Origin: Octopus sinensis
Lineage: Eukaryota
Length of the DNA stretch: 64,000 nt
Direction of reading: 5' to 3'
Assembly (NCBI RefSeq): GCF_006345805.1
Contig: NC_043005.1
Coordinates: 90,644,001 to 90,708,000, forward strand
This document shows, piece by piece, positions 22,348 through 57,778 of this stretch. Under the pieces are notes generated by a model. It was not told the DNA's origin. It saw only the letters and a list, made by a program, of their open reading frames with translations, and made no database searches. A program made the position numbers and the translations under genes. Each line of letters begins with the position of its first letter. Within the stretch, counting starts at the first letter, position 1.

Positions 22348-22384
22348 CTTATTATTATAATTATAATAATAATTATTATTGTTA

Positions 22385-22575: not shown

Positions 22576-22651
22576 AAACAAATAATAATAATAATAATAA
22601 TAATGATAATAATAATAATAATAATAATAATTATTATTATTATTTCTATAG

Positions 22652-26664: not shown

Positions 26665-26900
26665 CTCTCACCGACAAACGTGCTGTATCACTCCTTCTGA
26701 TGTTTCTACAGCTACTACTGTGGCCTCTGCTCGCCGGAGTTAGCTGATCTTATACTACCCCCACCCTGATCCACCATCTTACACCTTTCTCTTTCTCCTG
26801 TCACCTTTATTACCCTCATCAGTTCTTACATTAACCACTGCACCCAATTCCTGCTTCTCAGCAAGTTGGCCCTTTGGAATTCCCTTTCGCTTATGCCGTT
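26665..26900 (+). mobile_element. Old CR1/Jockey-group LINE ORF2 C-terminal remnant
   Basis: Translates to CFYSYYCGLCSPELADLILPPP..LALWNSLS, resembling the FYRYY.G.CS.EL..L.P...LWNSLP C-terminal motif of CR1/L2/Jockey ORF2 proteins. Confidence 0.45.
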
Positions 26901-27366
26901 TGTGATATTTAATCTCAAGCCAACACTGACCAAGTAGGCCAATGCTCAAAGACACTGTGGCTGCCACTAATCCACCTTGGACTACATTCTTTAATGTGAC
27001 ATTTCCATATAACAGTGGGGATGTGTGTGATGTGAGAGACAATTGTTTGCTGTCTCTTTTACATCAAGTCACTGCGGTTTCTTTTCCTGCAACCTCCAAC
27101 CAACAAGTATTATTCGAGAGCAACATTAATCGCCTTGATCCCACTGAGAACCGTCCATGGAGATGGTCATATCCTTTCCTCCCATAGGAAATGAAACGTT
27201 AAAAAAAAGAAAAAAAGATCAAGTGAAAATCCTACTGGTTCGGCTTTACCTCATATTGTTGTCTCTGCTAGTTAAAGTACCAGTAATACGCTGAGGTTGA
27301 TTCTAATACTTATAACCATTCTGTCTTCTGAGAAAGAGGTGATAAAATATCTATCTATCTATCTAA

Positions 27367-28728
27367 TGGGCCGAGAGGAAACTGTCCCTAAAAGGTCGGG
27401 CGGAGGTGGCGAACGCGTACATCGCGTCCGTCATCAACTACCGCCTGACCGTCTTGTCCCGACCCCACCGTCACCAAACTGGAACGCATCCTCTTCCGCT
27501 TCTTGTAGAAAGGAAACGTTCTGATGGTCAGGCGATCAGTTTGCTGTCAACACCCGCTGAAAGGAGGGCTGGGCATGCTGTGGTTGATGATGCGCAGACA
27601 CGCGCTGAGACTGCGACATCTCAGGCTCTACGTAGACGACGGCAAGCAGGTGTGGTCGCTGTTTGTGCAGTGCGCTTTCCCGCAACTCGTGTCCATGACC
27701 GAGCTGCAATCGTGGATCAAAAAGAGGCCGAGGTAGGGCGAATGGCACCGCGAGTGTCGTGTTGCTCTCCAGCAACTTTGCTGTCCTGGGTCGAACTTGA
27801 GCGACTGTATCACCACGAAAGCATTTTATAGGGGTTTAGTAGAGGGGAGGTACGACGACGATCTCGGGGCGAACATGGGCGTCGATGAGGAATACCTGAC
27901 CCTCCTGTTCAGGACAATTTTCGGGCCGGGACCTATGGACAATTTCCAGAGATCCCTGGCCTGGCAGTGCTTATCGAGAAGCGCTACCCGTTCGGGATAA
28001 GCTCTATAGACATGGTTCGAGAAACCTGCCCGTGATGCGGTCAGAGCGACGAAACCGTTCTGCACGCACTCGTGCAGTGTCCAACCATTTCCGACCTGTG
28101 GGCTTATGTCGAACGACTGCCGTCACATGTGGGACGAGTCGGTTTATCAGCCGAGTCTATCGTCAATATCGTCACACCTCCTTCCCTCAAACGGGAAGGA
28201 AGAGCTATTTTCATAATACTTGTAGTTATGGCGAAATAATGTATCTGGTGAACGCGTCTGAAAGGATTGGAGACAAACACTTTCCTCTCTGGTCAATCTC
28301 TCATCAACTTCTTCAAGTATCACCTGAAAAGGAAAGTGAGAGTAGAGAGGCAAGTTTTGTCTAGCGAATGTTTCAAAAAAAGATGGGTAAATGTAGCAAG
28401 GATGGCACGTATGAATGACGAAGCCACCTTGAGCATGATCCTATGAACCGTAAAAAAATTTAATACAGAGAGTTACTTATTTGTAAATAAATGTTAATAT
28501 GTAACTTAATTGCCCGAGGTTACAGTGGTCTTTTCGTAGGTTTTTCTTTCCACAGATAAACCTCCCCATTTCTTGGGAACTTTTTGTACTATTTCGACAT
28601 TTTTTGCATATATCCCCAACGATTTCTATCCATTTTGATCGTTGTCCCTATTTTCCCCCCCCCCCCCCGAAAAGAAAAAACTACATTGTAATTGTCCCCT
28701 CTGTGTTTAGCCCTGTGTGGCCAATAAA

Positions 28729-28730
<2 letters not shown>
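27367..28730 (+). mobile_element. L1/Tx1-clade LINE, 5'-truncated and decayed
   Basis: WAERKLSLKGRAEVANAYIASVINYRLTVL..KLERILFRFL..VRRSVCCQHPLKGGLGM (post-RT region of L1/Tx1), then TCP*CGQSDETVLHALVQCP (zf-RVT CCHC finger). The 3' UTR ends ttgtcccctctgtgtttagccctgtgtggccaataaa. Confidence 0.8.
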
Positions 28731-28771
<41 letters not shown>

Positions 28772-28989
28772 CTATCTTTTCTTTGTCTTCATCTCCCCCT
28801 CTCTCTTCCTATAAATTTATGTTTGTGTAGATATACATACACACGCATATCTGTACATACTTATACAATCCCCCTTCCCTTTCCTCCAACTGTCTCCCTC
28901 TCCTATTTCTCTACCCATCTCTTTCTTTCTCTGTCGTCTGTCTTTGTGTCTGTTTCTCTCTCTCTCTTATTCTTTTCCCCCTCTCTCTA

Positions 28990-31385
28990 GGTATATTCAG
29001 CAAAGACGTCGCGAAATTGGAGAATCAGACTGCAACTATTTCTGCGAGTCTGGAAAATCGCAGATGTAGACCCTGCAAACATCATTGTGGCAGCACTAAA
29101 CAGTAATGGCTTCCCCTGATCTGCGGCCCAGGTAAAGCTGAAGAAACTAGAATTACTTCGTTTCTATGACCCCATTAGAACACGCATCAGCGGCCTGGAT
29201 GCCCTTCTGGGAAATGATTGCAGCAAAGATGACAATAAAGATGGGAAAAGTGAAAAGGAAAAGAGAGGTTTCCCGTGTTTAGCAGACCCTCAAAACAACA
29301 AAGCCGGAGCCACGACTGAGAGGCTTGCTAACGAAGAAAACATTGATACTGGCCCTGTCCCCACCATTGTAGAGAGTCAAAGAGATGAAAGGGCTGAAAA
29401 AAAAGAAGAAAACAAAAGCTCCCGGAAACAACGAAGAGCAAGGAGTTAGAGGAGAAGAAAAAGAAGAAAAAGAAGAAAAAACTTTGGAGCAAAGCAAAGA
29501 CCTCCAACAACGTGAGCAAAAGAAACAGGAGGTACAAAGCAAAAGTAGAAACATATGTAGGTAGATTTTAGTGGTAAGGAAACTGTTGGCATGGAAACAA
29601 TGGGTAAAACTGACGTTTTGCACATCAGAAGACCTGCATAAACCGCAAGGGCCTAAATCAGAACTCCTTTCCAGGGGAAGGACAAATGAAAGAGAGGCAC
29701 CAAAGAAGGAAAAATTTCGCACAGTCTACTCCCTAAAAGACGATATGCAGACATAGGGCATGCTACTCCAAACAACCAGCCTCATCCAGATGTGAAAAGA
29801 GCAGCAGCTGAGCAAAAATCTGTTTGTGCGTGACACAAAAACTTGTGCAGCAGCTGACCTGGTTACGTCAAGCACACAGACTTGGAACCACATCCACCAT
29901 CGCATGAGGCCACCACAGTCGACAGATACAGGATGGCCACCACTAACGCCAACACAGGCGTCACACTAATATTTCCATGAAACAACAAAACAAAAATCTC
30001 TTTCCTGGGAGAACTAGCCGCATGCTATCAAGTTCTATTACAGCACTTGTGGAAACGCATCTTGGACCTGTTGTAGGAGATGCAGAAGTACACATGCCAA
30101 AATATGTTGTAATACGAACGGACAGAAAAGAGAGGGGCCACGGTGCAGTTGTAGTGTATATCTGATGGGATATCACGCCCTACGTCCTGTATCATATTCA
30201 AATTCAGTATGTGACACTCAAATTGTACACATAAGACAACTTAATATTGTTATATATATATTACATATCGCCCACTAGATGCTCCAAATCACATAGGCAA
30301 GATTGAAGACTGCCTCGCAAAAATAAAAGTTCTCACCAAACTGGAGCACACACATCAGTGCATTCCTTTTGGGTGACTTTAACTTCCCCAATGACGGATA
30401 GCCCAAGAATGACACACACTCAACAAGCACAGGTGGAGGTCCTGCTTAACCTTACTGATGCTTAAGTCATGGAGCAAATTGTGCTTCAACCAATCAAAGC
30501 AAATAATATACTGGATCTCTACTTTACAAACAATATGGATATCATCCATAATGCGAAAATGACATTGACACTAGTCTCGGATCACAATATAATAAATCTG
30601 TCTATGTATGGACCAAAAGCTGTTGCCAACATACAACCAATACGGAACACCAGAAATCTCTCCAGTCTGAACTTTCATAAGGCAAATTGGAAATCGATCC
30701 GGAAAGGGATCCTCTAACTGGATTGGCCTAAATGTCTCTCCACACCAGACATTCGTATGAAGCTTAAGCATTTCATGTCCGTAATGCAAGCCATGTAATG
30801 CAATCTGTCACAGAGCCCAAGGTCAACACACACGAGAACAAGATTCCTAAGGAGAGGGAATTTTTTTATGAGATGATGGATAGAGATTGCAAACCACCTG
30901 AACGAACATCTCAAAAGTAATGAAAAGTCCCGCCTGCAAACAACACTGATGGAGATGGAAAAAAGTCTGTATCATTCCCATGGAAAAGAGAGCAGACAAG
31001 AAGGCTTGGGCAATAAAAAATATTGAGTGAAACCCTAAGGTTTTCTTTAACTTTGCCAAAGAAGCGACCTCAGAACGCTACAAGATAGGGTCCCACCTCC
31101 AAAAGGACAGTTCCCTCACAGAAAACCCAATGAAGATAAGTGAAATTCTGAGCGAAGAGTTCAAAAGTGTTTCTACTACTCTTTTAGGATGCAAGAAGTG
31201 AACACACCAGCGGAGTTCTTTGCCATTTCTCCTGAAACCAAGGCGGCGATAATAATTGATTACATCGACATTAAAAGAACATGTAATGCTGACCATAGAT
31301 GAGGTAGAAGCAAAATCAGCCGCTGGCCCTGATGGATTCCCAGCAATCCTTCTCAAATCATGCAAACGAGCCCTTGCAAAACGAC
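28990..31385 (+). mobile_element. CR1/L2-group LINE remnant (ORF1 CCCH finger, APE endonuclease, start of RT)
   Basis: A degenerate ICR..CWHGNNG..RFAHQKTC finger lies at ~29550. Endonuclease motifs are ALVETHL..DAEVHMPKYVVIRTDRKERGHG and NNILDLYFTNN..SDHNII. The pre-RT motif KSAAGPDGFPAILLKSCK is at ~31315-31370. Many stops are present. Confidence 0.8.
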
Positions 31386-33607: not shown

Positions 33608-35158
33608 GGGTCAGTAGGAACAAGTGTATTGAAATATTTATTATAGAAGATTAACAACATGTTAAGACTAGATATTTCGTACATATTTAAATATATCTAA
33701 TATCTATCTTTCGTGGAAATTTCAAGCGAATGGAATAAATATTTCGTAAGTTATAAGGAAATAAACAGTCTTCCAAATTGCAGCGGCCAAAAGTTAAGTG
33801 TCACTTAGAGAGAATGAACTATTAACCGAGGTGTTTGTTGTTTAGAAAATTGTTAATGGGCTAACAGCTACTTCTTATGATCTTACATTATTGGAACATT
33901 CAACTGTCAACATGGTGGCTTGTGAGAGACGACCAGCGTCTTGTGATAAAAAAAACCCAAAGATTGTGTGCCTTCATTAAGAGGGCAAGTCAAATTCTGT
34001 GATAACAACTACTGTAGGAAGGTCTAGGAGTGTTGAGCAACGAATTGTAGCTCGTTTTAAGTCATCAGAATCGGCAGATGCTAAACCCCAAACCGGTAGA
34101 CCTCGTAAGACTTCACCAAGACAGGATCATATTATGGTTTGAACGTCACTGAAGGATAGGTTTAAGAGTGCTGCTGTGATATCCCGTGAGTTTAGCTCCA
34201 CTTCCGATGTCAACGTATTGCGCAAAACAGTTTCTCGGAGGTTACAAGGTTCTGGGTTGCTTGCTTGGGCACCGGCAAAGAAACCTCTGATCTCCAAGAA
34301 GAATCAAAGAGCCCGTCTTCGTTTCGCTCACGAACATGTCGTATGGAGAAGGTTCATTTTAGCGATGAACCGAAGTTTAATGTAATTGGTTCCAATGGCG
34401 GAATGTACGTCCGACGAGGAAGTGGTGAATGGTTATCTCGCGCATGTGTGAAGAAGACAATGAAATATGGGGGAGGCAGTGTAATGGTATGGTGAGTGAT
34501 CTCTGCTGCTGCTGGTCCTGGTCCACTTATTCGCCTAAAAGGGACTGACAATGCTGAAATCTACAAGCAGATTCTTAGACAGCATGCCCTTCCACATCTC
34601 CGATCCTCGTCAATTCAACCTCCTATCTTCGTGCAGAACAACGTTCCCTGTTAAACAGCGAAAGATTTTTTGAGTGAAGGGGGTGATCTCATGGACTGGC
34701 CACCCCAAAGGCCCGATCTCAACCCTGTAGAAAACGTTTGGAAAATTAATGGAGATGAGGCGCTAAGGAGAAATCCAAAGAACCAAATTGAACTCTGGGA
34801 ATTATTGAGAAACGAATGGAACATCATTTTGCAAGAAATTTATTCGGTCCTGTGGTAACAGATGTCAGGACGTCATTGATAGTAAAGGGATGTCCTCAAA
34901 ATATCAATAGTAAGGGTTTCTTTTTTGTTCTTGTTCCATTTTTTATTATTTTTCTGAGTGACCCTTAACTTTTGACCGTTGCATATTGGAAGATTATTTG
35001 TTTATTTCCTCTTAACTTACGAAATATTTATTCCATTCGCTTGAAATTTTCACGAAAGATAGATATTAGATTATCTAAATATGTACAAAATATCTAGTCT
35101 TAACGTTTTGTCAATTATCTATAATAAATATTTCAATACACTTGTTTTTACTAGCCCT
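33606..35158 (+). mobile_element. Tc1-family DNA transposon, near full length, long TIRs, inactive transposase
   Basis: ~205-bp inverted repeats at 33606-~33812 and ~34950-35158 (cagggtcagtaggaacaagtgtattgaaatattt.. / ..aaatatttcaatacacttgtttttactagccct). Transposase motifs are GRPRKTS, KKPLISKKNQRARLRFA, VHFSDEPKFN, KYGGGSVMVW and WPPQRPDLNPVENVW. Stops and frameshifts are present. Confidence 0.9.
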
Positions 35159-35556: not shown

Positions 35557-35800
35557 ACACACACACACACATATATATATATAAAAGACGAACTTCCGTA
35601 CAATTTCTGTCACCCAAATTCACTCACAAGGCATTGGCTAGTCTGGAGCAATTGTAGACGAAATGCTCAAGATGGCGCGCAATGGGACTGAACCACGTGG
35701 TCGCAAAGTGAGTTTCTTAACCACACACTGATACCTGCTGCTATATATATTTTTATTTTGCTTTTCATTTCGTTTCATTTTTGTTTTTCATTTTGCAGCC

Positions 35801-35861
35801 ATGAAACCCTTGGGTATCTTAATATTACTAACCCTCGGGGTTTATGTTGAAGGTAGAGGGC
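35801..35861 (+). CDS. First coding exon (signal peptide) of an unnamed secreted acidic repeat polyprotein
   Basis: Strong acceptor tttttcattttgcag/CC, then ATG at 35801. It encodes MKPLGILILLTLGVYVEGRG: basic n-region, hydrophobic core and a V-E-G cleavage motif. A consensus donor C/GTAAGT follows at 35862 in phase 1, compatible with the exon at 36748. Confidence 0.78.
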
Positions 35862-35937
35862 GTAAGTATTCAAATATTTACTGTAATTGTCACGTACCCA
35901 CGTTACACAACACACAGTCACACTAGAAAACTGGTTG

Positions 35938-36009
<72 letters not shown>

Positions 36010-36309
36010 ACTGTTGCTGTTGTCGTCTTCTTCTTCTTGTTCTTCTTCTTCCAATCAGGACTCACGCCATTAGTCACAAAGAATAATCTCTAATTCGAGC
36101 CTACTCTAAGCTACCAAGAATGCGTGTGGACACTTGAAGATCCACCCACCACACGCAATAGACTGGCGGTTGCACGGGCGCGAAAGCTACGTTATCCTTT
36201 TTCCGTAAACGGTGGCTTTTAACGGGTGGAGAGCTGAACCATCCTGGGGTACAGAGGATTCGCAATCTAGACTAGGATCTGAAAGTTTTACCACACCATA
36301 GTGGGTTAC

Positions 36310-36515
36310 ACTATGGTTCCTCTGCTTTGTGGCAGAAGTAGGAAGAAAGAGTGAGAGAAAGTTGTGGTGAAAGAGTACAGCAGGTTCACCACTACACCCC
36401 GCCAGAGCCTCGTGAAGCTTAGGTGTTTTTGCTCAATAAACACTCACAATGCCCGGTCTGGGAATCGAAACCGCGTTCTTACGACCGCGAGTCCGCTGCC
36501 CTAACCACTGGGTCA
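36310..36515 (-). mobile_element. tRNA-derived SINE, family 3 (intronic)
   Basis: Reverse complement matches the head and body of the copy at 45889 (cagtggttagggcagcggactcgcggtcg..ggtttcgattcccagaccgggc..caactttctctcactctttc). Confidence 0.7.
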
Positions 36516-36747
36516 TTGTACCTCCTTTGCTGCTGTTGCGGCTGCTGTTACTACTACGGTGACACAGACGAAATGCAATTGACTAGTACTTACATTAGTA
36601 CATAACAACACAATTTATTTCATACGTCCATTGGTTATTATGAGAGTAAATAGTGCAAACAAAATATGTAAAAATATAAATAGTCCCCCTTTCCAAAATC
36701 AGAAAACAGTTTTCATAAAATTTTTATGGAACTTTGTTTATTTGCAG

Positions 36748-36873
36748 TGTGTAAAGGTACCAGTAAGTGTCATTTGAAAAATGAATCATATATTGAAGAA
36801 ACGAATGGTCGTTGTTTCCGTGTGACTTGCAAGAATACGGATGAGGGCACTGTGGAGGAATGTGTTCTTGTAG
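36748..36873 (+). CDS. Second coding exon: cysteine-rich module of the secreted polyprotein
   Basis: Acceptor tttatttgcag/, donor GTAG/GTAAGT, 126 nt, phase 1-1, no stops. It encodes (L)CKGTSKCHLKNESYIEETNGRCFRVTCKNTDEGTVEECVLV(E). A sixth Cys is the first full codon of the next exon. Confidence 0.82.
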
Positions 36874-37812
36874 GTAAGTACAGAAACATCTGCTGTTATG
36901 AATATAAGTTTAATTGTTAAAATTCACGCCGCTCATCTATTTGAGTTAGTTCTCTTAATTCATTTGTTTAAACATACAAATTTGTCTCGCTAAAAAATAT
37001 TCATAATTTGTTTTTAATGTGGAAAATTGTAGCCCTCGATTTGCAAGTTTTGTGATACTATACTACACTGAGGAGGTCTAAAAATACGAAACATGTGTCC
37101 ATAGTTGTCTCTTGCACGCGAACAATGAACCCTGTCCTTTACTCTAAATATGTAAATTTGAAAATTTAAATCTTAATTTCTTAAGATAACATCTCCTTCC
37201 CTGCGCTTAGCGAAGGCAGATACCGACAGCTGACCTCAATGATACAAGGGCATTGACATCACCACCAGAGCCAGGCCGAAACTGAGATTTCTCCCTACAA
37301 TGTATAATACGAGGTGGAAGTTGTCATAAATTTAGCTTTCCAAGGCCGCATAAGTTTAAGTGGAAAAAAGGCACTATCTTTGCGAATATCTTCGAAAACA
37401 AATTTCTAACGTTGCATTTATTAGTTATAAATGTGAAATCCATTACAGCGCCCCTCATCCTACCATTGCTCTCTTTCCTCAGCAGCATCAATTTTCCTCA
37501 GTTTGGGATTTCTTGTTTGTTGTTCAAGAGTAGCATGATAGTTGTGAGCCAAATGTAAATTTGGCATTCTTTAAGGAGTCACTAAGGGAAAAAAATATTA
37601 CGAAGCCCTTTATTTAAGAATGTGACTCAAATATTCCTCGCCTTCGTCTCCCACCGTAATTTGCATCAGACATTCGAGGCATGTATTGAAGCCTTTTGTC
37701 TCTTGGTAGATGGGAGTACTATATGTATGTCATTATTTAGTTTTATTTCAAGATTTCTTGCCAATAGAGAAAGAGCCTAGATCCAAAGCTCCTTCATTGG
37801 AAGTTAAACAGG

Positions 37813-37843
<31 letters not shown>

Positions 37844-38244
37844 TGTATGTATGTATGTATGTATAGTATGAGAAAAGGAATTCAGGAAATCCAGGCGTCT
37901 ATCTCAGTCAGTATTCCGTACGAAATCCCGGCCAACAGGATGCATAAAGAGGAAAAACCGCCCAGTTAATCTAAACATATTCTATACAAACTGAACATTC
38001 GCGAAATGTATCGATTATAAAATAGTTCATCCAACACAGAATATAAAATAAAACAGTGAAAAGAATAAAGAAGGCGGTATTGCATTTACCAACCAGTTAC
38101 GACCGTTTCAATAACTAGTGAATTGTTACAACGTATATCTCTCTGTCTGTAAATCGATTAATGAACCAATCATTCAATAATCTATCTATCCATCCACACA
38201 TCCGTCCGTCCGCCCGTCTGTCCATCCATTCATCCGTCCGTCGG

Positions 38245-38300
<56 letters not shown>

Positions 38301-38330
38301 CCTACCTACCTACCTACCTACCTACCTACA

Positions 38331-38370
<40 letters not shown>

Positions 38371-38422
38371 AATCAATCAATCAATCCATCCATCCATCCA
38401 TCCATCCATCCATCCATCCATC

Positions 38423-38506
<84 letters not shown>

Positions 38507-38535
38507 CTACACATTATGTTAATAATATCTTACAG

Positions 38536-41500
38536 AATGTGAATCAGACGAAAAGACAAATAATGGTGTTGCGAATGAAACAAACAAGATAAGTGAAGAA
38601 GCGAAAAGCGAGGAAGGAAGTGAAGCAGAGGAATCACAAAAGTATAAAAGAAAGCGTTCATTGAACGAAAATGAAGAAGAAAAGACTGAAGGTGACGCTA
38701 GTGAAGAAGAGAAAGCCGACGAAAGAAGAAGTGAAAGGGTGAATGAAAATGAAGATGAAAAAACTGAAGGTGACGCTAGTGAAGAAGAGAAGGCCGACGA
38801 TCGAAGAAGTGAAAAAGTGAATGAAAATGACGAAGAAAAGACTGAAGGAGACGATAATGAAGAAGCGAACGCCGACGAACGAAGAAGTGAGGCAAAGGAA
38901 TCGAAAAAGAATAAGAGAAAACGTTCAGTTAACGAAAGTGAAGAAGAAAAAACTGAAGGTGACGCTAGTGAAGAAGAGAAAGCCGACGATCGAAGAAGTG
39001 AAGAAGTGAATGAAAATGAAGAAGAAAAGACTGAAGGTGACGGAGAAGAAGAAGAGAAAGGTGACGAACGAAGAAGTGAAGCAGTCAATGAAAATGAAGA
39101 AGAAAAGACTGAAGGAGACGATAATGAAGAAGCGAAAGCCGACGAACGAAGAAGTGAGGCAAAGGAATCGAAAAAGAATAAGAGAAAACGTTCAGTTAAC
39201 GAAAATGAAGAACAAAAAACTGAAGGTGACGCTAGTGAAGAAGAGAAAGCCGACGATCGAAGAAGTGAAGAAGTGAATGAAAATGAAGAAGAAAGGACTG
39301 AAGGTGACGGAGAAGAAGAAGAGAAAGGTGACGAACGAAGAAGTGAAACAGTAAATGATAATGAAGAAGAAAAGACTGAAGGAGACGATAATGAAGAAGC
39401 GAAAGCCGACGAACGAAGAAATAATGCAAAGGAATCGAAAAAGAATAAGAGAAAACGTTCAGTTAACGAAAATGAAGAAGAAAAAACTGAAGGTGACGCT
39501 AGTGAAGAAGAGAAGGCCGACGATCGAAGAAGTGAAGAAGTGAATGAAAATGAAGAAGAAAAGACTGAAGGTGACGGAGAAGAAGAAGAGAAAGGTGACG
39601 AACGAAGAAGTGAAATAGTCAATGAAAATGAAGAAGAAAAGACTGAAGGAGACGATAATGAAGAAGCGAAAGCCGACGAACGAAGAAGTAATGCAAAGGA
39701 ATCGAAAAAGAATAAGAGAAAACGTTCAGTTAACGAAAATGAAGAAGAAAAAAATGAAGGTGACGCTAGTGAAGAAGAGAAGGCCGACGATCGAAGAAGT
39801 GAAGAAGTGAATGAAATGAAGAAGAAAGACTGAAGGTGACGGAGAAGAAGAAGAGAAAGGTGACGAACGAAGAAGTGAAATAGTCAATGAAAATGAAGAA
39901 GAAAAGACTGAAGGAGACGATAATGAAGAAGCGAAAGCCGACGAACGAAGAAGTAATGCAAAGGAATCGAAAAAGAATAAGAGAAAACGTTCAGTTAACG
40001 AAATGAAGAAGAAAAAAATGAAGGTGACGCTAGTGAAGAAGAGAAAGCCGACGATCGAAGAAGTGAAAAAGTGAATGAAAATGAAGAAGAAAAGACTGAA
40101 GGTGACGGAGAAGAAGAAGAGAAAGGTGACGAACGAAGAAGTGAAGCAGTCAATGAAAATGAAGAAGAAAAGACTGAAGGAGACGATAATGAAGAAGCGA
40201 AAGCCGACGAACGAAGAAGTAATGCAAAGGAATCGAAAAAGAATAAGAGAAAACGTTCAGTTAACGAAAATGAAGAAGAAAAGACTGAAGGTGACGCTAG
40301 TGAAGAAGAGAAAACCGACGATCGAAGAAGTGAAACAGTCAATGAAAATGAAGAAGAAAAGACTGAAGGAGACGATAATGAAGAAGCGAAAGCCGACGAA
40401 CGAAGAAGTAATGCAAAGGAATCGAAAAAGAATAAGAGAAAACGTTCAGTTAACGAAAATGAAGAAGAAAAAAATGAAGGTGACGCTAGTGAAGAAGAGA
40501 AGGCCGACGATCGAAGAAGTGAAGAAGTGAATGAAAATGAAGAAGAAAAGACTGAAGGTGACGCTAGTGAAGAAGAGAAAGGTGACGAACGAAGAAGTGA
40601 AAGAGTCAATGAAAATGAAGAAGAAAAGACTGAAGGAGACGATAATGAAGAAGCGAAAGCCGACGAACGAAGAAGTAATGCAAAGGAATCGAAAAAGAAT
40701 AAGAGAAAACGTTCAGTTAACGAAAATGAAGAAGAAAAGACTGAAGGTGACGCTAGTGAAGAAGAGAAAGCCGACGATCGAAGAAGTGAAAGAGTCAATG
40801 AAAATGAAGAAGAAAAGACTGAAGGAGACGATAATGAAGAAGCGAAAGCCGACGAACGAAGAAGTAATGCAAAGGAATCGAAAAAGAATAAGAGAAAACG
40901 TTCAGTTAACGAAAATGAAGAAGAAAAAATGAAGGTGACGCTAGTGAAGAAGAGAAGGCCGACGATCGAAGAAGTGAAGAAGTGAATGAAAATGAAGAAG
41001 AAAAGACTGAAGGTGACGGAGAAGAAGAAGAGAAAGGTGACGAACGAAGAAGTGAAACAGTCAATGAAAATGAAGAAGAAAAGACTGAAGGAGACGATAA
41101 TGAAGAAGCGAAAGCCGACGAACGAAGAAGTAATGCAAAGGAATCGAAAAAGAATAAGCGAAAACGTTCAGTTAACGAAAATGAAGAAGAAAAGACTGAA
41201 GGTGACGCTAGTGAAGAAGAGAAAGCCGACGATCGAAGAAGTGAAAAAGTGAATGAAAATGAAGAAGAAAAGACTGAAGGTGACGGAGAAGAAGAAGAGA
41301 AAGGTGACGAACGAAGAAGTGAAACAGTCAATGAAAATGAAGAAGAAAAGACTGAAGGAGACGATAATGAAGTTGCGAAAGCCGACGAACGAAGAAGTAA
41401 TGCAAAGGAATCGAAAAAGAATAAGAGAAAACGTTCAGTTAACGAAAATGAAGAAGAAAAAAATGAAGGTGACGCTAGTGAAGAAGAGAAAGCCGACGAT

Positions 41501-44500
41501 CGAAGAAGTGAAAAAGTGAATGAAAATGAAGAAGAAAAGACTGAAGGTGACGGAGAAGAAGAAGAGAAAGATGACGAACGAAGAAGTGAAATAGTCAATG
41601 AAAATGAAGAAGAAAAGACTGAAGGAGACGATAATGAAGAAGCGAAAGCCGACGAACGAAGAAGTAATGCAAAGGAATCGAAAAAGAATAAGAGAAAACG
41701 TTCAGTTAACGAAAATGAAGAAGAAAAGACTGAAGGTGACGCTAGTGAAGAAGAGAAAACCGACGATCGAAGAAGTGAAACAGTCAATGAAAATGAAGAA
41801 GAAAAGACTGAAGGAGACGATAATGAAGAAGCGAAAGCCGACGAACGAAGAAGTAATGCAAAGGAATCGAAAAAGAATAAGAGAAAACGTTCAGTTAACG
41901 AAAATGAAGAAGAAAAAAATGAAGGTGACGCTAGTGAAGAAGAGAAGGCCGACGATCGAAGAAGTGAAGAAGTGAATGAAAATGAAGAAGAAAAGACTGA
42001 AGGTGACGGAGAAGAAGAAGAGAAAGGTGACGAACGAAGAAGTGAAACAGTCAATGAAAATGAAGAAGAAAAGACTGAAGGAGACGATAATGAAGTTGCG
42101 AAAGCCGACGAACGAAGAAGTAATGCAAAGGAATCGAAAAAGAATAAGAGAAAACGTTCAGTTAACGAAAATGAAGAAGAAAAAACTGAAGGTGACGCTA
42201 GTGAAGAAGAGAAAGCCGACGATCGAAGAAGTGAAAAAGTGAATGAAAATGAAGAAGAAAAGATTGAAGGTGACGGAGAAGAAGAAAAGGTGACGAACGA
42301 AGAAGTGAAGCAGTCAATGAAAATGAAGAAGAAAAGACTGAAGGAGACGATAATGAAGAAGCGAAAGCCGACGAACGAAGAAGTAATGCAAAGGAATCGA
42401 AAAAGAATAAGAGAAAACGTTCAGTTAACGAAAATGAAGAAGAAAAGACTGAAGGTGACGCTAGTGAAGAAGAGAAAGCCGACGATCGAAGAAGTGAAAA
42501 AGTGAATGAAAATGAAGAAGAAAAGACTGAAGGTGACGCTAGTGAAGAAGAGAAAGCCGACGATCGAAGAAGTGAAAGAGTCAATGAAAATGAAGAAGAA
42601 AAGACTGAAGGAGACGATAATGAAGAAGCGAAAGCCGACGAACGAAGAAGTAATGCAAAGGAATCGAAAAAGAATAAGAGAAAACGTTCAGTTAACGAAA
42701 ATGAAGAAGAAAAGACTGAAGGTGACGCTAGTGAAGAAGAGAAAGCCGACGATCGAAGAAGTGAAAGAGTCAATGAAAATGAAGAAGAAAAGACTGAAGG
42801 AGACGATAATGAAGAAGCGAAAGCCGACGAACGAAGAAGTAATGCAAAGGAATCGAAAAAGAATAAGAGAAAACGTTCAGTTAACGAAAATGAAGAAGAA
42901 AAAAATGAAGGTGACGCTAGTGAAGAAGAGAAGGCCGACGATCGAAGAAGTGAAGAAGTGAATGAAAATGAAGAAGAAAAGACTGAAGGTGACGGAGAAG
43001 AAGAAGAGAAAGGTGACGAACGAAGAAGTGAAACAGTCAATGAAAATGAAGAAGAAAAGACTGAAGGAGACGATAATGAAGAAGCGAAAGCCGACGAACG
43101 AAGAAGTAATGCAAAGGAATCGAAAAAGAATAAGCGAAAACGTTCAGTTAACGAAAATGAAGAAGAAAAGACTGAAGGTGACGCTAGTGAAGAAGAGAAA
43201 GCCGACGATCGAAGAAGTGAAAAAGTGAATGAAAATGAAGAAGAAAAGACTGAAGGTGACGGAGAAGAAGAAGAGAAAGGTGACGAACGAAGAAGTGAAG
43301 CAGTCAATGAAAATGAAGAAGAAAAGACTGAAGGAGACGATAATGAAGTTGCGAAAGCCGACGAACGAAGAAGTAATGCAAAGGAATCGAAAAAGAATAA
43401 GAGAAAACGTTCAGTTAACGAAAATGAAGAAGAAAAAACTGAAGGTGACGCTAGTGAAGAAGAGAAAGCCGACGATCGAAGAAGTGAAAAAGTGAATGAA
43501 AATGAAGAAGAAAAGACTGAAGGTGACGGAGAAGAAGAAGAGAAAGGTGACGAACGAAGAAGTGAAACAGTCAATGAAAATGAAGAAGAAAAGACTGAAG
43601 GAGACGATAATGAAGAAGCGAAAGCCGACGAACGAAGAAGTAATGCAAAGGAATCGAAAAAGAATAAGAGAAAACGTTCAGTTAACGAAAATGAAGAAGA
43701 AAAAACTGAAGGTGACGCTAGTGAAGAAGAGAAAGCCAACGAAAGAAAAAGTGAAAAAGTGAATGAAAATGAAGAAGAAAAGACTGAAAATGACGGAGAA
43801 GAAGAAGAGAAAGGTGACGAACGAAGAAGTGAAGCAGTCAATGAAAATGAAGAAGAAAAAACTGAAGGTGACGCTAGTGAAGAAGAGAAAGCCGACGATC
43901 GAAGAAGTGAAAAAGTGAATGAAAATGAAGAAGAAAAGACTGAAGGTGACGGAGAAGAAGAAGAGAAAGGTGACGAACGAAGAAGTGAAACAGTCAATGA
44001 AAATGAAGAAGAAAAGACTGAAGGAGACGATAATGAAGAAGCGAACGCCGATGAACGAAGAAGTGAGGCAAAGAATCGAAAAAGAATAAGAGAAAACGTT
44101 CAGTTAACGAAAATGAAGAAGAAAAGACTGAAGGTGACGCTAGTGGAGAAGAGAAAGCCGACGATCGAAGAAGTGAAGGAGTGAATGAAAATGACGAAGA
44201 AAAGACTGAAGGTGATGCTAGTGAAGAAGAGAAAGGTGACGAACGAAGAAGTGAAACAGTCAATGAAAATGAAGAAGAAAAGGCTGAAGGAGACGATAAT
44301 GAAGAAGCGAAAGCCGACGAACGAAGAAGTGACGCAAAGGAATCGAAAAAGAATAAGAGAAAACGTTCAGTTAACGAAAATGAAGAAGAAAAGACTGAAG
44401 GTGACGCTAGTGAAGAAGAGAAAGCCGACGATCGAAGAAGTGAAAAAGTGAATGAAAATGAAGAAGAAAAGACTGAAGGTGACGGAGAAGAAGAAGAGAA

Positions 44501-44921
44501 AGGTGACGAACGAAGAAGTGAAGCAGTCAATGAAAATGAAGAAGAAAAGACTGAAGGAGACGATAATGAAGAAGCGAAAGCTGACGAACGAAGAATTGAT
44601 GCAAAGGAATCGAAAAAGAATAAGAGAAAACGTTCAGTTAACGAAAATGAAGAAGAAAAAACTGAAGGTGACGCTAGTGAAGAAGAGAAAGCCGACGATC
44701 GAAGAAGTGTAAAAGTGAATGAAAATGAAGAAGAAAAGACTGAAGGTGACGCTAGCGAAGAAGAGAAAGCCGACGAACGAAGAAGTGAAACAGTCAATGA
44801 AAATGAAGAAGAAAAGTCTGAAGGTGACGCTAGTGAAGAAGCGAAAGCTGAAGGAACAAATAGCGAAAACAAATCACTACTGAGCCGAATTCTACGCCAT
44901 AATCACACAATTTTTTATTAG
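38536..44921 (+). CDS. Giant terminal exon: Glu/Asp-rich tandem-repeat polyprotein with dibasic and furin sites (frame broken by six small deletions in this assembly)
   Basis: Acceptor atcttacag/AA TGT is phase 1 and in frame with ORF 38661. It reads (E)[41 protein letters not shown], then the repeats, then a unique tail [22 protein letters not shown] and stop at 44919-44921. The five ORF-track fragments are one reading frame offset by deletions at ~39815, 39826, 40002, 40926, 42286 and 44073. Confidence 0.82.
38661..44840 (+). repeat. Coding higher-order tandem array of 78-nt and 111-nt monomers (commonest block 267 nt)
   Basis: 46 x 78 nt + 23 x 111 nt = 6141 nt. Subtracting the 9 deleted nt places the last partial monomer at 44793, which is what the sequence shows. 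Confidence 0.97.
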
Positions 44922-48379: not shown

Positions 48380-49208
48380 CAACACTGGTTTCAGATTTTG
48401 GCACAAGGCCAGCAATTTCATTTGAGTGAGCAAGGGGATTACATCGATCCCACTGATCAGTTAGTACATATTCTCTTGGCCCTGAAAGGATGAAAGGTAA
48501 AGTCGGCCTCGGTGGAATTTAAACACAGAGCGTAAAGACGGACGAAATGCCGCAAAGCATCATGTCCGGTGTGCAAACGATTCTGCCAGCTGGCTACCCT
48601 AAAGTCATATGTAATACTGATTTCAAATTTTGGCACAAGGTCAGTTATTTCAGGGGCAGGTGCTCAGTGGGCTATATCGACTCTATTGCTCAACTGGTAC
48701 TAATTTTGTTGACCCCGAAAGGATGAAAGGCGTAGTCGACCTCGGCGTAATTTGAACTCAGAACGTAAAGACAGACAGAATACCTATTTCTTTACTACCC
48801 ACAAGGGGCTAAACACAGAGGGGATAAACAAGGACAGACAAACGCATTAAGTCGATTGTATCGATCCCAGTGCGTAACTGGTACTTAATTTATTGACTCC
48901 GAAAGGATGAAAGGCAAAGTCGACCTCGGCGGGATTTGAACTCAGAACGTAGCGGCAGACGAAATACCTATTTCTATTTCTTTACTACCCACAAGGGGCT
49001 AAACACAGGGAGGACAAACAAGGACCGAAAAAAGGGATCAAGTCGATTATATCGACCCCAGTGCGTAACTGGTACTTATTTAATCGACCCCGAATGGATG
49101 AAAGGCAAAGTCGACCTCGGCGGAATTTGAACTCAGAACGTAGCGACAGACGAAATACCGCTAAGCTTTTCCCATGGCATGCAAAGGATTCTGCCAGCTC
49201 GCCGCCTT
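48380..49208 (-). mobile_element. SINE family 1 cluster including a head plus tandem bodies
   Basis: Repeated aaggatgaaaggc..agtcgacctcggc..atttgaactcagaacg. Multimer junctions gaaatacctatttctttac lie at ~48777 and ~48961. The head ends at gccagctcgccgcctt (~49208). Confidence 0.8.
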
Positions 49209-49209
49209 C

Positions 49210-51888: not shown

Positions 51889-52761
51889 ACATATGTATGT
51901 ACGTATATGGTACATCTGTTTCCTATTCTGAATCCTCTGCCAGTTTCCAGCTAACTCGTCTCCTACCTATAAAACAAACCATATCGTCGTCACCATAATC
52001 AAAACTAGTGATTGTAGTAATAATAGTCGTGGTGGGGGTGGGGGATAATGGTGGGTAGCTGTGGTGGAAGGTGGTGGGTGGTTTATTAACTTGACAAAAT
52101 CCAAAGGAACGTTTATTTTCTTGAGTCATCCACTCACACACACACACACACACACATCTGATACATGTTAACTATATCTACAACCGCTCACAGCGTCTCT
52201 TTGTTACTCTCTTCCTCCTCCTCTTCTTACACTTCCTCCCCTCTCTCCATCCTCCCCTCCTGTTCCTCCTCATTTTCTGCCTTCTTTTGCCTCGTCCCTC
52301 CGTTTCCCTCCCTCATTCTCTTCCCAATCTTCTTGATTCTCATGCAGCCTCCTATATAAGATGAGCTTCTTTCAGTTTCCGTCCACCAAATCCACTCACA
52401 AGACTCTGCTTGGGCCGAGGTTATCGTAGAAGATACTTGCCAAAGGTGACACGCAGTGGGACCGAAACCCGGAACCATATGGTTGGGAAGCAAGCTTCTT
52501 ACCAAATGACTAGGTCTGCAACTATATAATTCCGTTATAAGGTTTCTTAAGAATCAAGGCAGATCAACCAGAAATGGCACATCAACAAGAAATGGCACAT
52601 CAAATAGTAATGGCACATCAGCCAGAACTGCGAGTTCTAACATAAAACTCGCAGTGAAATAAACAATATTCTCTTCTACTCTTGGCACAAGGCCCGAAAT
52701 TTTCGGGGAGGGGGCCGGTCAATTAGATCGACCCCAGTACGCAACTGGTACTTAATTTATC

Positions 52762-53012
52762 GACCCGGAAAGGATGAAAGGCAAAGTCGACCTAGGCAGA
52801 AATTGAACTCAGAACATGAAGACAGACAAAGTACTACTAAGCATTTCGCCCAGCGTGCTAACGTTTCTGTCAGCTCGCCGCCTTATTGATGACTTCAATT
52901 GTTGGCAGGATTCCGTAGATATGCAAAGAGAAAATCCAGTTTATAATCATAGATCATGAGTGGTTTGTTGGTATGGCGTCGGTGTAAGAAGTAAATGTCA
53001 AATAGCGTTTAA
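52762..53012. repeat. Inverted duplicate of 55668-55917 (SINE head plus unique flank)
   Basis: The flank tagatatgcaaagagaaaatccagtttataatcatagatca..gtaaatgtcaaatagcg occurs reverse-complemented at 55668-55790. The two SINE copies share private variants (gacccggaaagg, gaaattgaac, aaagtact). Confidence 0.85.
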
Positions 53013-54091: not shown

Positions 54092-54675
54092 GGCGAGCTG
54101 GCAGAAACGTTAGCACGCCGGGCGAAAGGCTTTGTGATATTTCGTCTGCCGTTACGTTCTGAGTTCAAATTCCGCCGAGGTCGACTTTGCCTCTCATCCT
54201 TTCGGGGTCGATAAATTAAGTACCAGTTACGCACTGGGGTATATATAATCGACTTAATCCGTTTGTCTGTCCTTGTTTGTCCCCTCTGTGTTTAGCCCCT
54301 TGTGGGTAGGTATTTCGTCTGCTGTTACGTTCCGAGTTCAAATTCAGCCGCGGTCGACTGTGCCTTTCATCTTTCCGAGATCGATAAATTAAGTACCAGT
54401 TGCGTAATGGGTCGAGCTAATTGATTGTTCCCCCTCATATATATATATTTCTTTACTACCACAAGGGGCTAAACATAGAGGGGACAAACAAGGACAGACA
54501 AAGGGATTAAGTCGATTACATCGACCCAGTGCGAAACTGGTACTTTATTTATCGACCCCGAGAGGATGAAAGGCAAAGTCGACCTCGGCGGAATTTGAAC
54601 TCAGAACGTAACGACAGACGAAATACCGCTAAGCATTTCGCCCGGCGCGCTAACGTTTCTGCCAGCTCGCCGCCT
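54092..54675. mobile_element. Two family-1 SINEs tail-to-tail (+ dimer ~54092-54420; - copy ~54445-54675)
   Basis: ggcgagctggcagaaacgttagcacgccgggcgaaa at 54092 and its reverse complement ending gccagctcgccgcc at ~54673. Confidence 0.75.
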
Positions 54676-54961
54676 TCCCCCTCATATATAATATGTGTGT
54701 GTGTATGTGCGTACGTGCGTTCGTGTGTGTGCGTGCGCGGGTGCCTAGTGGTTAGGATGTTGCACTTACGATCGCCAGATCGCGGGTGCGATCTCCTGAC
54801 TGGACGGCGCATTGTGTTCTTGAGCAAAACACTTCATTTCACTTTGATCCAGTCACTCTTCGATCAGGGGAAAATGTTGGTCAGCTCACCTAGCCAGTGG
54901 CAAAAGCGCATTATGACCAGCGATGTGTAACAACATCTGATAGCCTGGTCGGTCATGTGAT

Positions 54962-57598: not shown

Positions 57599-57778
57599 TA
57601 TTTTACCACCAAAGACCTTTTCCCATGTACTAGAGGCATTAAAAGATACGGAGAAAAGAAAATATCTACAATGAATCCTCTTCTATCAAATAAATAAATA
57701 AATAGATAAAGAAAGAACGCGAGATGAAATGATGCGTCAAAAGCTCACGGATCGTCAATCCATTTAAAATTTTCTCTT

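What the first reader, a model, noticed from the sequence alone, without database searches (positions are those of the whole stretch)
38646..44840. Repeat grammar with two tiers of protease sites
Seen in sequence: three related monomers are present. A is [26 protein letters not shown] (26 aa), B is [26 protein letters not shown] (26 aa) and C is [37 protein letters not shown] (37 aa). They form 23 blocks, mostly ABC, also AC, AAC and one ABABC, and every block ends in C. All 69 complete monomers keep a dibasic site (RR, once RK), and there are 24 KRKR/S sites. The 89-aa ABC block has 38 D/E and 19 K/R and lacks Cys, Pro and aromatics. Inference: furin alone would give 63-141-aa acidic chains, while PC1/PC2-type cleavage would give 22-24-aa peptides such as [22 protein letters not shown]. 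No Gly precedes the basic sites, so the products would not be amidated, unlike typical neuropeptides. Substitutions cluster at positions such as the residue after RRSE (E/K/R/A/T/I) and largely spare the basic sites.
Basis: partly seen in the sequence, partly recalled or inferred. Interest (0 to 1): 0.78.

Follow-up and report, generated by a model that had tools for sequence, protein, structure and literature searches.

The report
Orphan secreted acidic repeat protein gene
An animal genome carries a two-exon gene with no detectable relatives that appears to encode a secreted, extremely acidic protein built from about 70 near-identical repeats with regularly spaced basic motifs; cutting at those motifs is plausible but untested, and the assembled copy is broken by six small deletions.

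Summary
The repeat grammar is real. There are 70 monomers (A and B 78 nt, C 111 nt) in 23 blocks: 14 ABC, 4 AAC, 4 AC and 1 ABABC. All 64 intact monomers keep RR or RK, and there are 24 KRKRS sites at the DNA level.

Six small deletions (five of 1 nt, one of 4 nt, sum -9) move it through frames 0-1-0-2-1-0. As assembled, translation stops after about 449 aa. One deletion is the only difference in 734 nt between two internal duplicates, so assembly error is likely but unproven.

A signal-peptide exon (MKPLGILILLTLGVYVE) lies 2.7 kb upstream. Its donors are phase 1 and match the phase-1 acceptor at 38535, which favours a secreted protein over a nuclear one.

No homologue, Pfam domain or solved-structure relative was found, and the structure model is low-confidence coil.

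The canonical furin motif R-X-[KR]-R is absent, because KRKR has Lys at P4. "Sparing" of the basic sites inside the array is not significant (P=0.21). A diverged copy of the site before the array keeps KRKRS through two synonymous changes.

Verdict: probably an orphan secreted polyanionic repeat protein. Convertase processing is plausible and has a precedent in the Aplysia ELH prohormone, but it is untested.

The parts
35742..35771 (+). Possible core promoter: TATATATA at 35742-35749 and an Inr-like TCATTTC at 35765-35771, about 25 nt downstream. Alternatively, the T-rich tract plus the cag ending at 35798 is a 3' splice site, which would make the ATG exon the second exon.
   Evidence: Sequence read. 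This is weak evidence, because (TA)n tracts are common in this window.
35801..35861 (+). Candidate signal-peptide exon: ATG in the context GCC ATG A, encoding MKPLGILILLTLGVYVE(GRG). It has two phase-1 donors, GAAG|GTAGAG (35852|35853) and GGGC|GTAAGT (35861|35862).
   Evidence: A strict scan found only 4 signal-peptide-plus-donor candidates in 128 kb of both strands. This one is the nearest upstream on the right strand, is in the right phase and has the best donor. Both spliced models read straight into the exon-2 frame.
35862..38535 (+). Intron of about 2.7 kb, rich in microsatellites. (TATG)14 lies at 37814-37870. (TCTA)66 lies at 38245-38506 and runs into the polypyrimidine tract of the acceptor ...ttaataatatcttacag|AA.
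38536..38660 (+). Unique N-terminal part of exon 2 (phase 1): (E/Q)[41 protein letters not shown]. It holds the only Cys of the mature protein, one NET sequon and a diverged copy of the C tail that ends in KRKRS.
   Evidence: In-frame stops at 38520-38525 (TAATAA) bound the exon on its 5' side.
38661..44867 (+). Tandem array of 70 monomers (A 78 nt, B 78 nt, C 111 nt) in 23 blocks plus a trailing AAa. It encodes [12 protein letters not shown]...RRSEx units, and each C unit adds [12 protein letters not shown].
39814..39827 (+). Frame-breaking lesions 1 and 2: two 1-nt deletions (A4 to A3) in one B monomer. The first in-frame stop follows at 39831.
40001..40003 (+). Frame-breaking lesion 3: a 1-nt deletion (A4 to A3) in an A monomer.
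40924..40929 (+). Frame-breaking lesion 4: a 1-nt deletion (A7 to A6). It is the only difference across 734 nt between 40590-41323 and its duplicate at 42565-43299.
42276..42289 (+). Frame-breaking lesion 5: a 4-nt deletion within GAAGAAGAAGAG of a B monomer.
44070..44075 (+). Frame-breaking lesion 6: a 1-nt deletion (GG to G) in a C monomer. After it the frame is again that of the exon start; the six deletions sum to -9.
44868..44921 (+). Unique C-terminal tail ...[22 protein letters not shown] followed by TAG at 44919-44921. It is the only hydrophobic or aromatic stretch of the mature protein. There is no GT donor between 44835 and the stop, so this is the terminal coding exon.
   Evidence: The first AATAAA downstream is at 46340.

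Best explanation
This is a lineage-restricted, two-exon animal gene on the + strand. Exon 1 encodes a cleavable signal peptide. Exon 2 (38536-44921) encodes a disordered, very acidic protein of about 2,130 aa (pI about 4.4).

The protein consists of a 41-aa head, 23 blocks of A, B and C repeats, and a short amphipathic tail. Each block is a 52-130-aa acidic stretch closed by a basic patch, [11 protein letters not shown]. Every 26-aa unit carries D/E-R-R-S.

The most likely mechanism is as follows. The chain enters the secretory pathway. Subtilisin-like proprotein convertases cut after the tetrabasic KRKR, giving 63-141-aa polyanionic chains. In cells with PC1/3- or PC2-type enzymes they also cut, less efficiently, after RR. 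This would yield up to about 70 copies of non-amidated acidic peptides of about 24 aa. These would act as bulk polyanions, for example as cation or amine counter-ions or as granule cargo, rather than as classical receptor ligands.

The array grows and homogenises by unequal crossing-over of 267-nt (ABC) and 456-nt (ABC+AC) units, and includes a recent 2-kb internal duplication.

The six small deletions that break the frame are more likely residual assembly errors in a hard-to-polish repeat than real mutations.

Shown: the repeat anatomy, the splice-compatible signal-peptide exon, the absence of relatives and the frame breaks.
Inferred: secretion, cleavage, the role of the products and the artefactual nature of the frameshifts.

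My rough sub-probabilities:
- coding on the + strand: 0.85
- secreted: 0.7
- cleaved at KRKR: 0.5
- cleaved at RR: 0.3
- frameshifts artefactual: 0.6
For: Coding:
- All three monomer lengths are multiples of 3, and the acidic frame has no nonsense substitution in 64 intact monomers. The other two sense frames carry more than 100 stops each.
- pN/pS among the A, B and C consensus sequences is 0.35-0.57. For example, the Val codon is GTT, GTG or GTC.

Gene model:
- The acceptor cttacag|AA at 38535 has a long pyrimidine tract, and stops lie just upstream.
- The signal-peptide exon at 35801 has phase-1 donors. It is one of only 4 such candidates in 128 kb.
- Splicing reads straight through into the repeat frame.
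- The stop lies 54 nt after the array, with no donor before it.

Disorder and orphan status:
- AlphaFold2 mean pLDDT is 53 and the model is mostly coil.
- Pfam gives no hit and the PDB gives none.
- There are no homologues in the word-indexed search of 5.8 billion proteins or in an exhaustive phmmer search of 1.84 billion representatives.

Sites:
- 64 of 64 intact monomers have RR or RK, and there are 24 KRKRS sites.
- The diverged pre-array copy (QKYKRKRS against KKNKRKRS) keeps KRKR through two synonymous changes (AAA/AAG, twice), while the flanking codons changed the residue (sequences).
- Tetrabasic-first, dibasic-later ordered cleavage is documented for the Aplysia ELH prohormone (PMC2119775).

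Frameshifts as artefacts:
- All six are deletions, and five are single bases lost from A or G runs.
- One is the sole difference in 734 nt between two duplicates.
- They sum to -9, which restores the frame of the tail.
- There are no nonsense substitutions, although about 6% of random substitutions would create one (my estimate from the codon make-up).
Against: - There are no expression, splice-junction or peptide data.
- The signal peptide was judged by hand rules, not by SignalP.
- The canonical furin pattern is absent, and RR sits in a strongly acidic context with no upstream basic residue.
- Conservation of the basic sites within the array is not significant (P=0.21) and could simply reflect young repeats.
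- The frame is broken as assembled. A neighbouring transposon copy, compared with an Illumina contig, shows no 1-nt homopolymer deletions over 1.8 kb. The assembly is therefore not obviously error-prone, although P(0) is only about 0.2.
- The antisense frame is equally open and shares the wobble position, so pN/pS does not separate the two strands.
- The peptide products would have none of the features of known bioactive peptides.
Confidence: 0.4

Rival explanations
1. A secreted or luminal polyanion that works uncleaved. On this reading it is a high-capacity, low-affinity cation (Ca2+) buffer, a mineralisation or adhesive matrix component, or a self-coacervating 'blocky' polyampholyte. The [11 protein letters not shown] patches would provide charge patterning or binding to anionic partners, not protease sites.
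For: - The signal-peptide exon.
- 64% charged residues, with segregated acidic (52-130 aa) and basic (11 aa) patches.
- Predicted disorder.
- No canonical furin motif.
- No significant sparing of the basic sites.
- The products would lack any features of a peptide hormone.
Against: - Exposed tetrabasic sites in a disordered secretory protein are usually convertase substrates (general knowledge; precedent in PMC2119775).
- KRKRS is kept in the diverged pre-array copy through synonymous changes only.
- The composition is Glu-rich, whereas many acidic matrix proteins are Asp-rich (my own knowledge).
Confidence: 0.3
2. The frameshifts are real. The locus would then be a recently inactivated pseudogene, or an allele truncated to about 449 aa (signal peptide, head and four blocks). 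The downstream 4.9 kb would be a decaying, untranslated repeat.
For: - Six frame-breaking deletions, with the first stop at 39831.
- No relatives anywhere, as expected for a young and dispensable gene.
- No homopolymer deletions in a nearby transposon copy compared with an Illumina contig.
- A4 runs are short for systematic long-read errors.
Against: - There are no nonsense substitutions and no insertions.
- The ratio of indels to substitutions among nearest paralogues is far above normal. One case shows 1 indel and 0 substitutions in 734 nt; another shows 3 indels and 2 substitutions in 342 nt.
- The net -9 restores the frame of the tail.
- Errors that survive polishing concentrate in tandem repeats (general knowledge).
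Confidence: 0.3
3. A nuclear or nucleolar acidic protein of the Nopp140, nucleolin or nucleoplasmin type. KKNKRKR would be a reiterated nuclear localisation signal, SEEE would be CK2 sites, and the 'signal-peptide exon' would be a chance ORF.
For: - KKNKRKR fits a classical monopartite NLS and S-E-E-E fits the CK2 consensus (my own knowledge).
- Alternating acidic and basic repeats resemble Nopp140.
- Exon 2 needs an upstream exon, and that exon was only inferred.
Against: - The signal-peptide-like exon is in the right place, on the right strand and in the right phase. Only 4 such candidates exist in 128 kb.
- No Pfam hit to SRP40, nucleoplasmin, RRM or LisH domains.
- No homologues, although nucleolar chaperones are conserved.
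Confidence: 0.08
4. Not this protein at all. The array would be a non-coding 267-nt satellite, or the antisense Ser/Phe/Leu-rich frame would be the coding one.
For: - Antisense ORFs of up to 599 aa span the array and are broken at the same lesions.
- Antisense pN/pS (0.40-0.70) is similar to sense, because the two frames share the wobble position.
Against: - Antisense openness is expected from the purine-rich composition.
- No good antisense splice signals were seen at the array edges, and there is no antisense Pfam hit above cut-off.
- The sense strand has an acceptor, a phase-matched signal-peptide exon, and in-frame unique head and tail.
- All monomer lengths are multiples of 3.
Confidence: 0.05

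Closest known systems
Aplysia egg-laying hormone (ELH) prohormone and similar multi-site neuropeptide precursors
   Same: - A secretory precursor with a hierarchy of basic sites. A tetrabasic site is cut first, and dibasic sites are cut later in the pathway (PMC2119775).
- It contains acidic connecting peptides.
   Different: - ELH has a single tetrabasic site and distinct bioactive peptides. This protein has 24 tetrabasic and about 70 RR sites in a homogeneous array.
- Here there are no hydrophobic or aromatic cores, no Gly for amidation and no sequence similarity.
Granins (chromogranin A and B, secretogranins)
   Same: Signal peptide, pI about 4.5, Glu-rich, disordered, and many dibasic sites that yield acidic peptides. 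Granins act as Ca2+ and amine-binding granule cargo (my own knowledge).
   Different: - Granins are not tandem-repeat proteins.
- There is no hit to the Pfam Granin family and no N-terminal disulfide loop; only one Cys is present.
- As far as I know, no invertebrate granin is established.
Tandem-repeat polyproteins cut at regularly spaced multibasic sites, for example nematode polyprotein allergens, Drosophila Baramicin, honeybee apidaecin precursors and fungal Kex2-processed repeat proteins
   Same: Signal peptide, many near-identical units, and each unit closed by a multibasic convertase site (my own knowledge).
   Different: - In those proteins the units are folded lipid-binders or cationic or hydrophobic peptides, and their sites are usually R-X-K/R-R or KR.
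- Here the units are uniformly acidic, the site has Lys at P4, and a second, nested RR tier exists.
Acidic luminal or matrix repeat proteins, for example the histidine-rich Ca-binding protein, sarcalumenin, and Asp-rich shell matrix proteins such as Aspein and MSP-1
   Same: Signal peptide followed by long acidic low-complexity repeats, some alternating with basic segments (my own knowledge).
   Different: - Those proteins are Asp-, Ser- or His-rich and are not organised around RR and KRKR motifs.
- No sequence similarity was detected.

Membership tests
Convertase-processed secretory polyprotein or prohormone | N-terminal signal peptide | tested here: inconclusive
   A candidate exon, MKPLGILILLTLGVYVE, has phase-matched donors. 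There is no SignalP run and no transcript evidence.
Convertase-processed secretory polyprotein or prohormone | Repeated units bounded by di- or multibasic sites | tested here: met
   64 of 64 intact monomers carry RR or RK, and there are 24 KRKRS sites.
Convertase-processed secretory polyprotein or prohormone | Canonical furin consensus R-X-[KR]-R at the block boundaries | tested here: not met
   There are zero matches to R.[KR]R or R..R in the consensus block. The site is K-N-K-R-K-R|S, with Lys at P4 and P6. The motif definition is taken from PMC3281273.
Convertase-processed secretory polyprotein or prohormone | Demonstrated cleavage products | not testable with these tools
   This needs peptidomics or co-expression with convertases.
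Classical neuropeptide precursor | Conserved bioactive core, often with a C-terminal Gly for amidation, and orthologues across related taxa | tested here: not met
   No Gly precedes the basic sites and the repeats have no hydrophobic or aromatic residues. No homologues were found.
Granin family | Sequence membership (Pfam Granin) or the N-terminal disulfide loop | tested here: not met
   Pfam gives no hit at E<=1. The mature protein has a single Cys.
Granin family | Acidic pI, Glu-rich, multiple dibasic sites, secretory | tested here: met
   pI 4.44, 37 D/E per 89 aa, repeated RR and KRKR sites, and a candidate signal peptide. These are resemblances only.
Nucleolar acidic/NLS repeat proteins (Nopp140, nucleolin, nucleoplasmin) | No signal peptide; conserved domains (SRP40_C, nucleoplasmin core, RRM) | tested here: not met
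   A signal-peptide-like exon is present in phase. There are no Pfam domains.
Functional protein-coding gene, as opposed to a pseudogene | Uninterrupted reading frame | tested here: not met
   Six frame-breaking deletions; the first stop is at 39831. Whether they are real could not be tested, because no reads are available.

The most novel reading that the evidence does not exclude
The intact gene would encode a roughly 2,150-aa secretory polyprotein that proprotein convertases dice, in two nested tiers, into about 70 copies of non-amidated, strongly acidic 22-24-residue peptides. That would make it a tandem-repeat, invertebrate functional analogue of the granins, or a new class of acidic secretory peptides. 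It would also be evolving fast enough to have no detectable relatives.
Probability: 0.15. Interest if true: 0.65.

Novelty: new member of a known kind. Interest (0 to 1): 0.35.

Why it matters
If the gene is intact, expressed and processed, it would be an unusually clean natural example of a nested cleavage grammar, with block-level tetrabasic sites and unit-level dibasic sites. It would produce bulk acidic peptides from a single exon.

It would also be a candidate for how invertebrate secretory cells obtain granin-like polyanions.

It shows how a young orphan gene can be built almost wholly by unequal crossing-over of a 26-aa unit.

On the practical side, it is a reminder that long purine-rich coding repeats in assemblies carry frame-breaking indels. 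Gene predictors, and a reader working by eye, handle these differently.

Tried and rejected
1. Homology searches found nothing:
   - the word-indexed search of 5.8 billion proteins, where the 8,000-candidate list may have been saturated by E-rich words;
   - an exhaustive phmmer search of 1.84 billion representatives;
   - Pfam on three sense pieces;
   - Pfam on the antisense ORFs, which gave only a sub-threshold LMF1_C match that I treat as noise;
   - PDB sequences;
   - an exact 28-nt pattern in JGI metagenome contigs;
   - peptide strings in the paper library.

2. Species identification failed.
   - A transposon ORF gave at best about 60-68% identity to named proteins (Penaeus indicus, Clytia), plus one 96% match in an Italian sewage metagenome contig.
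   - The abundant SINE was not found in the paper library.
   - From memory it resembles an octopus SINE, but I could not verify that.

3. Separating sense from antisense coding by pN/pS failed, because the two frames share the wobble position.

4. Gauging assembly indel quality was inconclusive. I compared a transposon copy with the Illumina contig L001 and looked at the homopolymer length spectrum.

5. The claim that substitutions spare the basic sites was tested and rejected as not significant.

6. No second copy of the signal-peptide exon or of the repeat exists elsewhere in the window.

7. Rfam found no RNA family in the window.
Full report
**Observation**

The array is real and far beyond chance. 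Tandem Repeats Finder reports a 267-nt period with 23.0 copies at 38617-44789 (score 4184), with sub-periods of 78 and 111 nt and a 456-nt higher-order period. A 31-nt C-to-A junction pattern occurs 19 times against 0 expected.

Anchoring on the monomer starts and parsing gives 70 monomers at 38661-44867. A and B are 78 nt and C is 111 nt. Their order is:

AAC ABC ABC ABC AbC aBC AC AAC AC aBC ABC ABC AC ABC AbC AAC AC ABC ABC ABC ABABc AAC ABC, then AA and a truncated a (lower case marks frame-broken monomers).

That is 23 blocks: 14 ABC, 4 AAC, 4 AC and 1 ABABC. The consensus peptides are:
- A: [26 protein letters not shown]
- B: [26 protein letters not shown]
- C: [37 protein letters not shown]

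All 64 intact monomers keep RR; one has RK. Counting the pre-array KYKRKRS and the frame-broken C, there are 24 KRKRS sites. The ABC block has 37-38 D/E and 19-20 K/R, a pI of 4.44, and none of C, P, F, W, Y, H, M, I, L or Q.

The acidic frame is not one ORF. Monomer spacing departs from 78 or 111 nt at five places. Alignment to the nearest intact paralogues shows six deletions:
- A4 to A3 at 39814-39816 and again at 39825-39827, both in the same B monomer
- A4 to A3 at 40001-40003
- A7 to A6 at 40924-40929
- a 4-nt loss at about 42276-42289
- GG to G at about 44073

The frame therefore runs 0, 1, 0, 2, 1, 0. The deletions sum to -9, so the tail and stop are in the same frame as the head. As assembled, translation from the proposed start ends at 39831 after 449 aa (452 aa with the alternative donor). 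That product would be the signal peptide, the head, four blocks and one A monomer.

**Are the frameshifts real?**

This could not be decided here. Several points favour artefact:
- All six are deletions, and five are single bases lost from A or G runs.
- There is no nonsense substitution, even though most codons (GAA, AAA, AAG, CGA, AGA) are one step from a stop.
- The ratio of indels to substitutions among nearest paralogues is abnormal. The array holds a recent duplication of about 2 kb at an offset of 1975-1976 nt. Within it, 40590-41323 and 42565-43299 are identical over 734 nt except for the deletion at 40924-40929. Likewise, 39726-40067 against 39459-39803 shows 3 deletions and only 2 substitutions.

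Two points count against artefact:
- A transposon copy at 60.9-62.6 kb, aligned to a 96.7%-identical Illumina metagenome contig (L001), shows no 1-nt homopolymer deletions over 1.8 kb. This is weak, because the chance of seeing none is about 0.2 at the array's rate.
- A4 runs are short for systematic long-read error.

I put about 0.6 on assembly error.

**Surroundings and gene model**

The window is animal DNA: 38% GC, dense in microsatellites, with many copies of a SINE and fragments of LINE and Tc1/mariner elements. No other convincing host gene was seen, and Rfam found nothing.

The acidic frame is closed by TAATAA at 38520-38525. A strong acceptor follows...(TCTA)n...ttaataatatcttacag|AA, at 38535|38536, and it puts the exon in phase 1. 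No in-frame ATG follows, so an upstream exon is required.

A scan for an ATG, a hydrophobic core and a phase-1 donor found one clean candidate 2.7 kb upstream. It reads GCC ATG AAA CCC ..., encoding MKPLGILILLTLGVYVE. Its two donors are GAAG|GTAGAG (35852|35853) and GGGC|GTAAGT (35861|35862), and both are phase 1.

Under stricter criteria only four such candidates exist on both strands of the whole window. This one is the nearest upstream on the correct strand and has the best donor. I estimate the chance coincidence at about 3%.

Both spliced models read straight into the repeat frame...GVYVE-E-CESDEK... or ...VEGRG-Q-CESDEK.... The 13-residue hydrophobic core is the length of a signal peptide, not of a membrane anchor.

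A TATATATA at 35742-35749 and an Inr-like TCATTTC about 25 nt downstream could be a core promoter. A T-rich tract ending in cag at 35798 could equally be an acceptor.

At the 3' end the array runs into a unique tail...[22 protein letters not shown], and a TAG at 44919-44921, with no GT donor after 44835. The first AATAAA is at 46340.

**Which strand is coding?**

The antisense strand also carries open frames of up to 599 aa, rich in Ser, Phe and Leu. This is expected for a purine-rich sense strand. The antisense frame shares its wobble position with the acidic frame, so pN/pS is similar: 0.35-0.57 sense and 0.40-0.70 antisense. It therefore cannot separate the strands.

The sense reading is preferred for three reasons:
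- It has the acceptor, the phase-matched signal-peptide exon, and the in-frame head and tail.
- The antisense array edges lack good splice signals.
- Antisense ORFs match nothing in Pfam above cut-off.

**Relatives**

None were found. The word-indexed search gave no hit among 8,000 candidates. An exhaustive phmmer search of 1.84 billion cluster representatives gave zero hits at E<=0.001. Pfam, PDB sequences, a JGI metagenome pattern scan and the paper library were all empty. A single-sequence AlphaFold2 model has mean pLDDT 53 and is mostly coil, consistent with intrinsic disorder.

**The protease interpretation**

The prerequisite, secretory routing, gains support from the signal-peptide exon. 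The arithmetic is right: 63-141 aa between KRKRS sites, 22-24 aa between RR sites, and no Gly for amidation.

Two parts of the argument weaken.
- First, the canonical furin pattern R-X-[K/R]-R (PMC3281273), and even the minimal R-X-X-R, are absent from the consensus block. The site is K-N-K-R-K-R|S, with Lys at P4 and P6. From my own knowledge, Arg at P1 with basic residues at P2, P4 and P6 can still be cut by furin-like enzymes, but less well than with Arg at P4. KR is also the favourite site of PC1/3 and PC2. The tiers are therefore better described as tetrabasic sites and plain RR sites in an acidic context, not as furin against PC1/2.
- Second, 'substitutions spare the basic sites' is not significant. 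Three variant alleles fall in the 30 basic-site columns against 5.3 expected (P=0.21). The repeats are about 98% identical within each type, so conservation inside the array says little.

One older comparison does help. The pre-array copy of the C tail ([11 protein letters not shown]) has diverged from the repeat copy ([11 protein letters not shown]) at the flanking codons. It keeps KRKR, and the only differences there are two synonymous ones (AAA/AAG and AAG/AAA; sequences).

Ordered cleavage at a tetrabasic site first and dibasic sites later is documented in a mollusc, for the Aplysia ELH prohormone (PMC2119775). [quoted passage not shown] The proposed mechanism therefore has precedent.

**Most likely mechanism and rivals**

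My best reading (0.4) is a young, lineage-restricted secreted polyanionic repeat protein. Convertases would cut it at KRKR (about 0.5) and perhaps at RR (about 0.3). The acidic products would serve as bulk polyanions rather than classical ligands. The array evolves by unequal crossing-over.

The rivals are:
- the same protein working uncleaved, as a cation buffer, matrix or coacervate component (0.3);
- a real pseudogene or truncated allele (0.3; this overlaps with either functional reading of the ancestral gene);
- a nuclear acidic protein with repeated NLS motifs (0.08);
- a non-coding or antisense-coding array (0.05).

**Comparison with known systems**

The gene works most like multi-site secretory precursors and polyproteins (ELH prohormone, granins, multibasic-site polyproteins). 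It is not a sequence member of any family that I tested. It fails the canonical-furin-motif feature and the granin-domain feature, and it lacks the hallmarks of neuropeptides.

**Novelty and score**

It is a new member of a known kind: a secreted, low-complexity acidic repeat protein with convertase-type motifs. The grammar is tidy and the orphan status is notable. However, expression, integrity and cleavage are all unverified. Interest: 0.35.

Noticed in passing
window 54481-54680, with about 20 further copies, e.g. 1789-1949, 22651-22847, 25394-25540, 48821-49209, 52718-52884, 56216-56404: A SINE-like element of about 200 nt (…GGCGAGCTGGCAGAAACGTTAGCGCGCCGGGCGAAATGCTTAGCGGTATTTCG…) occurs more than 20 times in 64 kb at 80-93% identity. 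From memory it resembles an octopus SINE. I could not verify that, and a literature search for the sequence was empty.
   Followed up: partly
window 60961-63105 (-), 63399-63926 (-), 21877-22413 (-): These are fragments of one retrotransposon family (the C-terminal part of the reverse-transcriptase ORF). The best named relatives are only about 60% identical (Penaeus indicus, Clytia hemisphaerica). A 96%-identical copy sits on a 1,983-nt contig of an Italian sewage metagenome (ERZ22666216), which suggests the source species or a close relative is eaten or lives there.
   Followed up: partly
window 57764-58657 (-); 34143-34855 (+); 6656-7033 (-): An RTE-like LINE reverse-transcriptase ORF (297 aa), and remnants of Tc1/mariner transposases. 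The second remnant lies only about 1 kb upstream of the proposed first exon.
   Followed up: no
window 38245-38506: A (TCTA)66 microsatellite runs directly into the polypyrimidine tract of the repeat exon's 3' splice site. Length polymorphism there might affect splicing.
   Followed up: no
window 38519-44872 (-): Antisense ORFs of 267-599 aa (Ser/Phe/Leu-rich) mirror the acidic frame and break at the same lesions. They share the wobble position with the sense frame, so codon-position statistics cannot tell the strands apart.
   Followed up: yes
window 40449-41437 and 42424-43413: A recent internal duplication of about 2 kb covers eight blocks (offset 1975-1976 nt). It includes 734 nt with no substitution, which shows ongoing unequal crossing-over.
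   Followed up: yes
every monomer, e.g. window 42451-42457 and 42418-42427: Each monomer holds a donor-like GAAG|GTGACG, and each C-to-A junction holds an acceptor-like TTCAG|TTAAC. Both are phase 1, so cryptic in-frame splicing between repeats is formally possible. The acceptors lack a pyrimidine tract, so I judge this unlikely.
   Followed up: no
window 44877-44918: The C-terminal [15 protein letters not shown] is the only hydrophobic or aromatic stretch of the mature protein. Its spacing (L2, L3, I6, L7, I13, F14) fits an amphipathic helix. C-terminal amphipathic helices are granule-sorting signals in some secretory proteins (my own knowledge). This was not tested.
   Followed up: no
window 26000-30000: This stretch has a higher GC content (0.43-0.44) than the rest of the window. 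No convincing ORF or domain was seen there.
   Followed up: no
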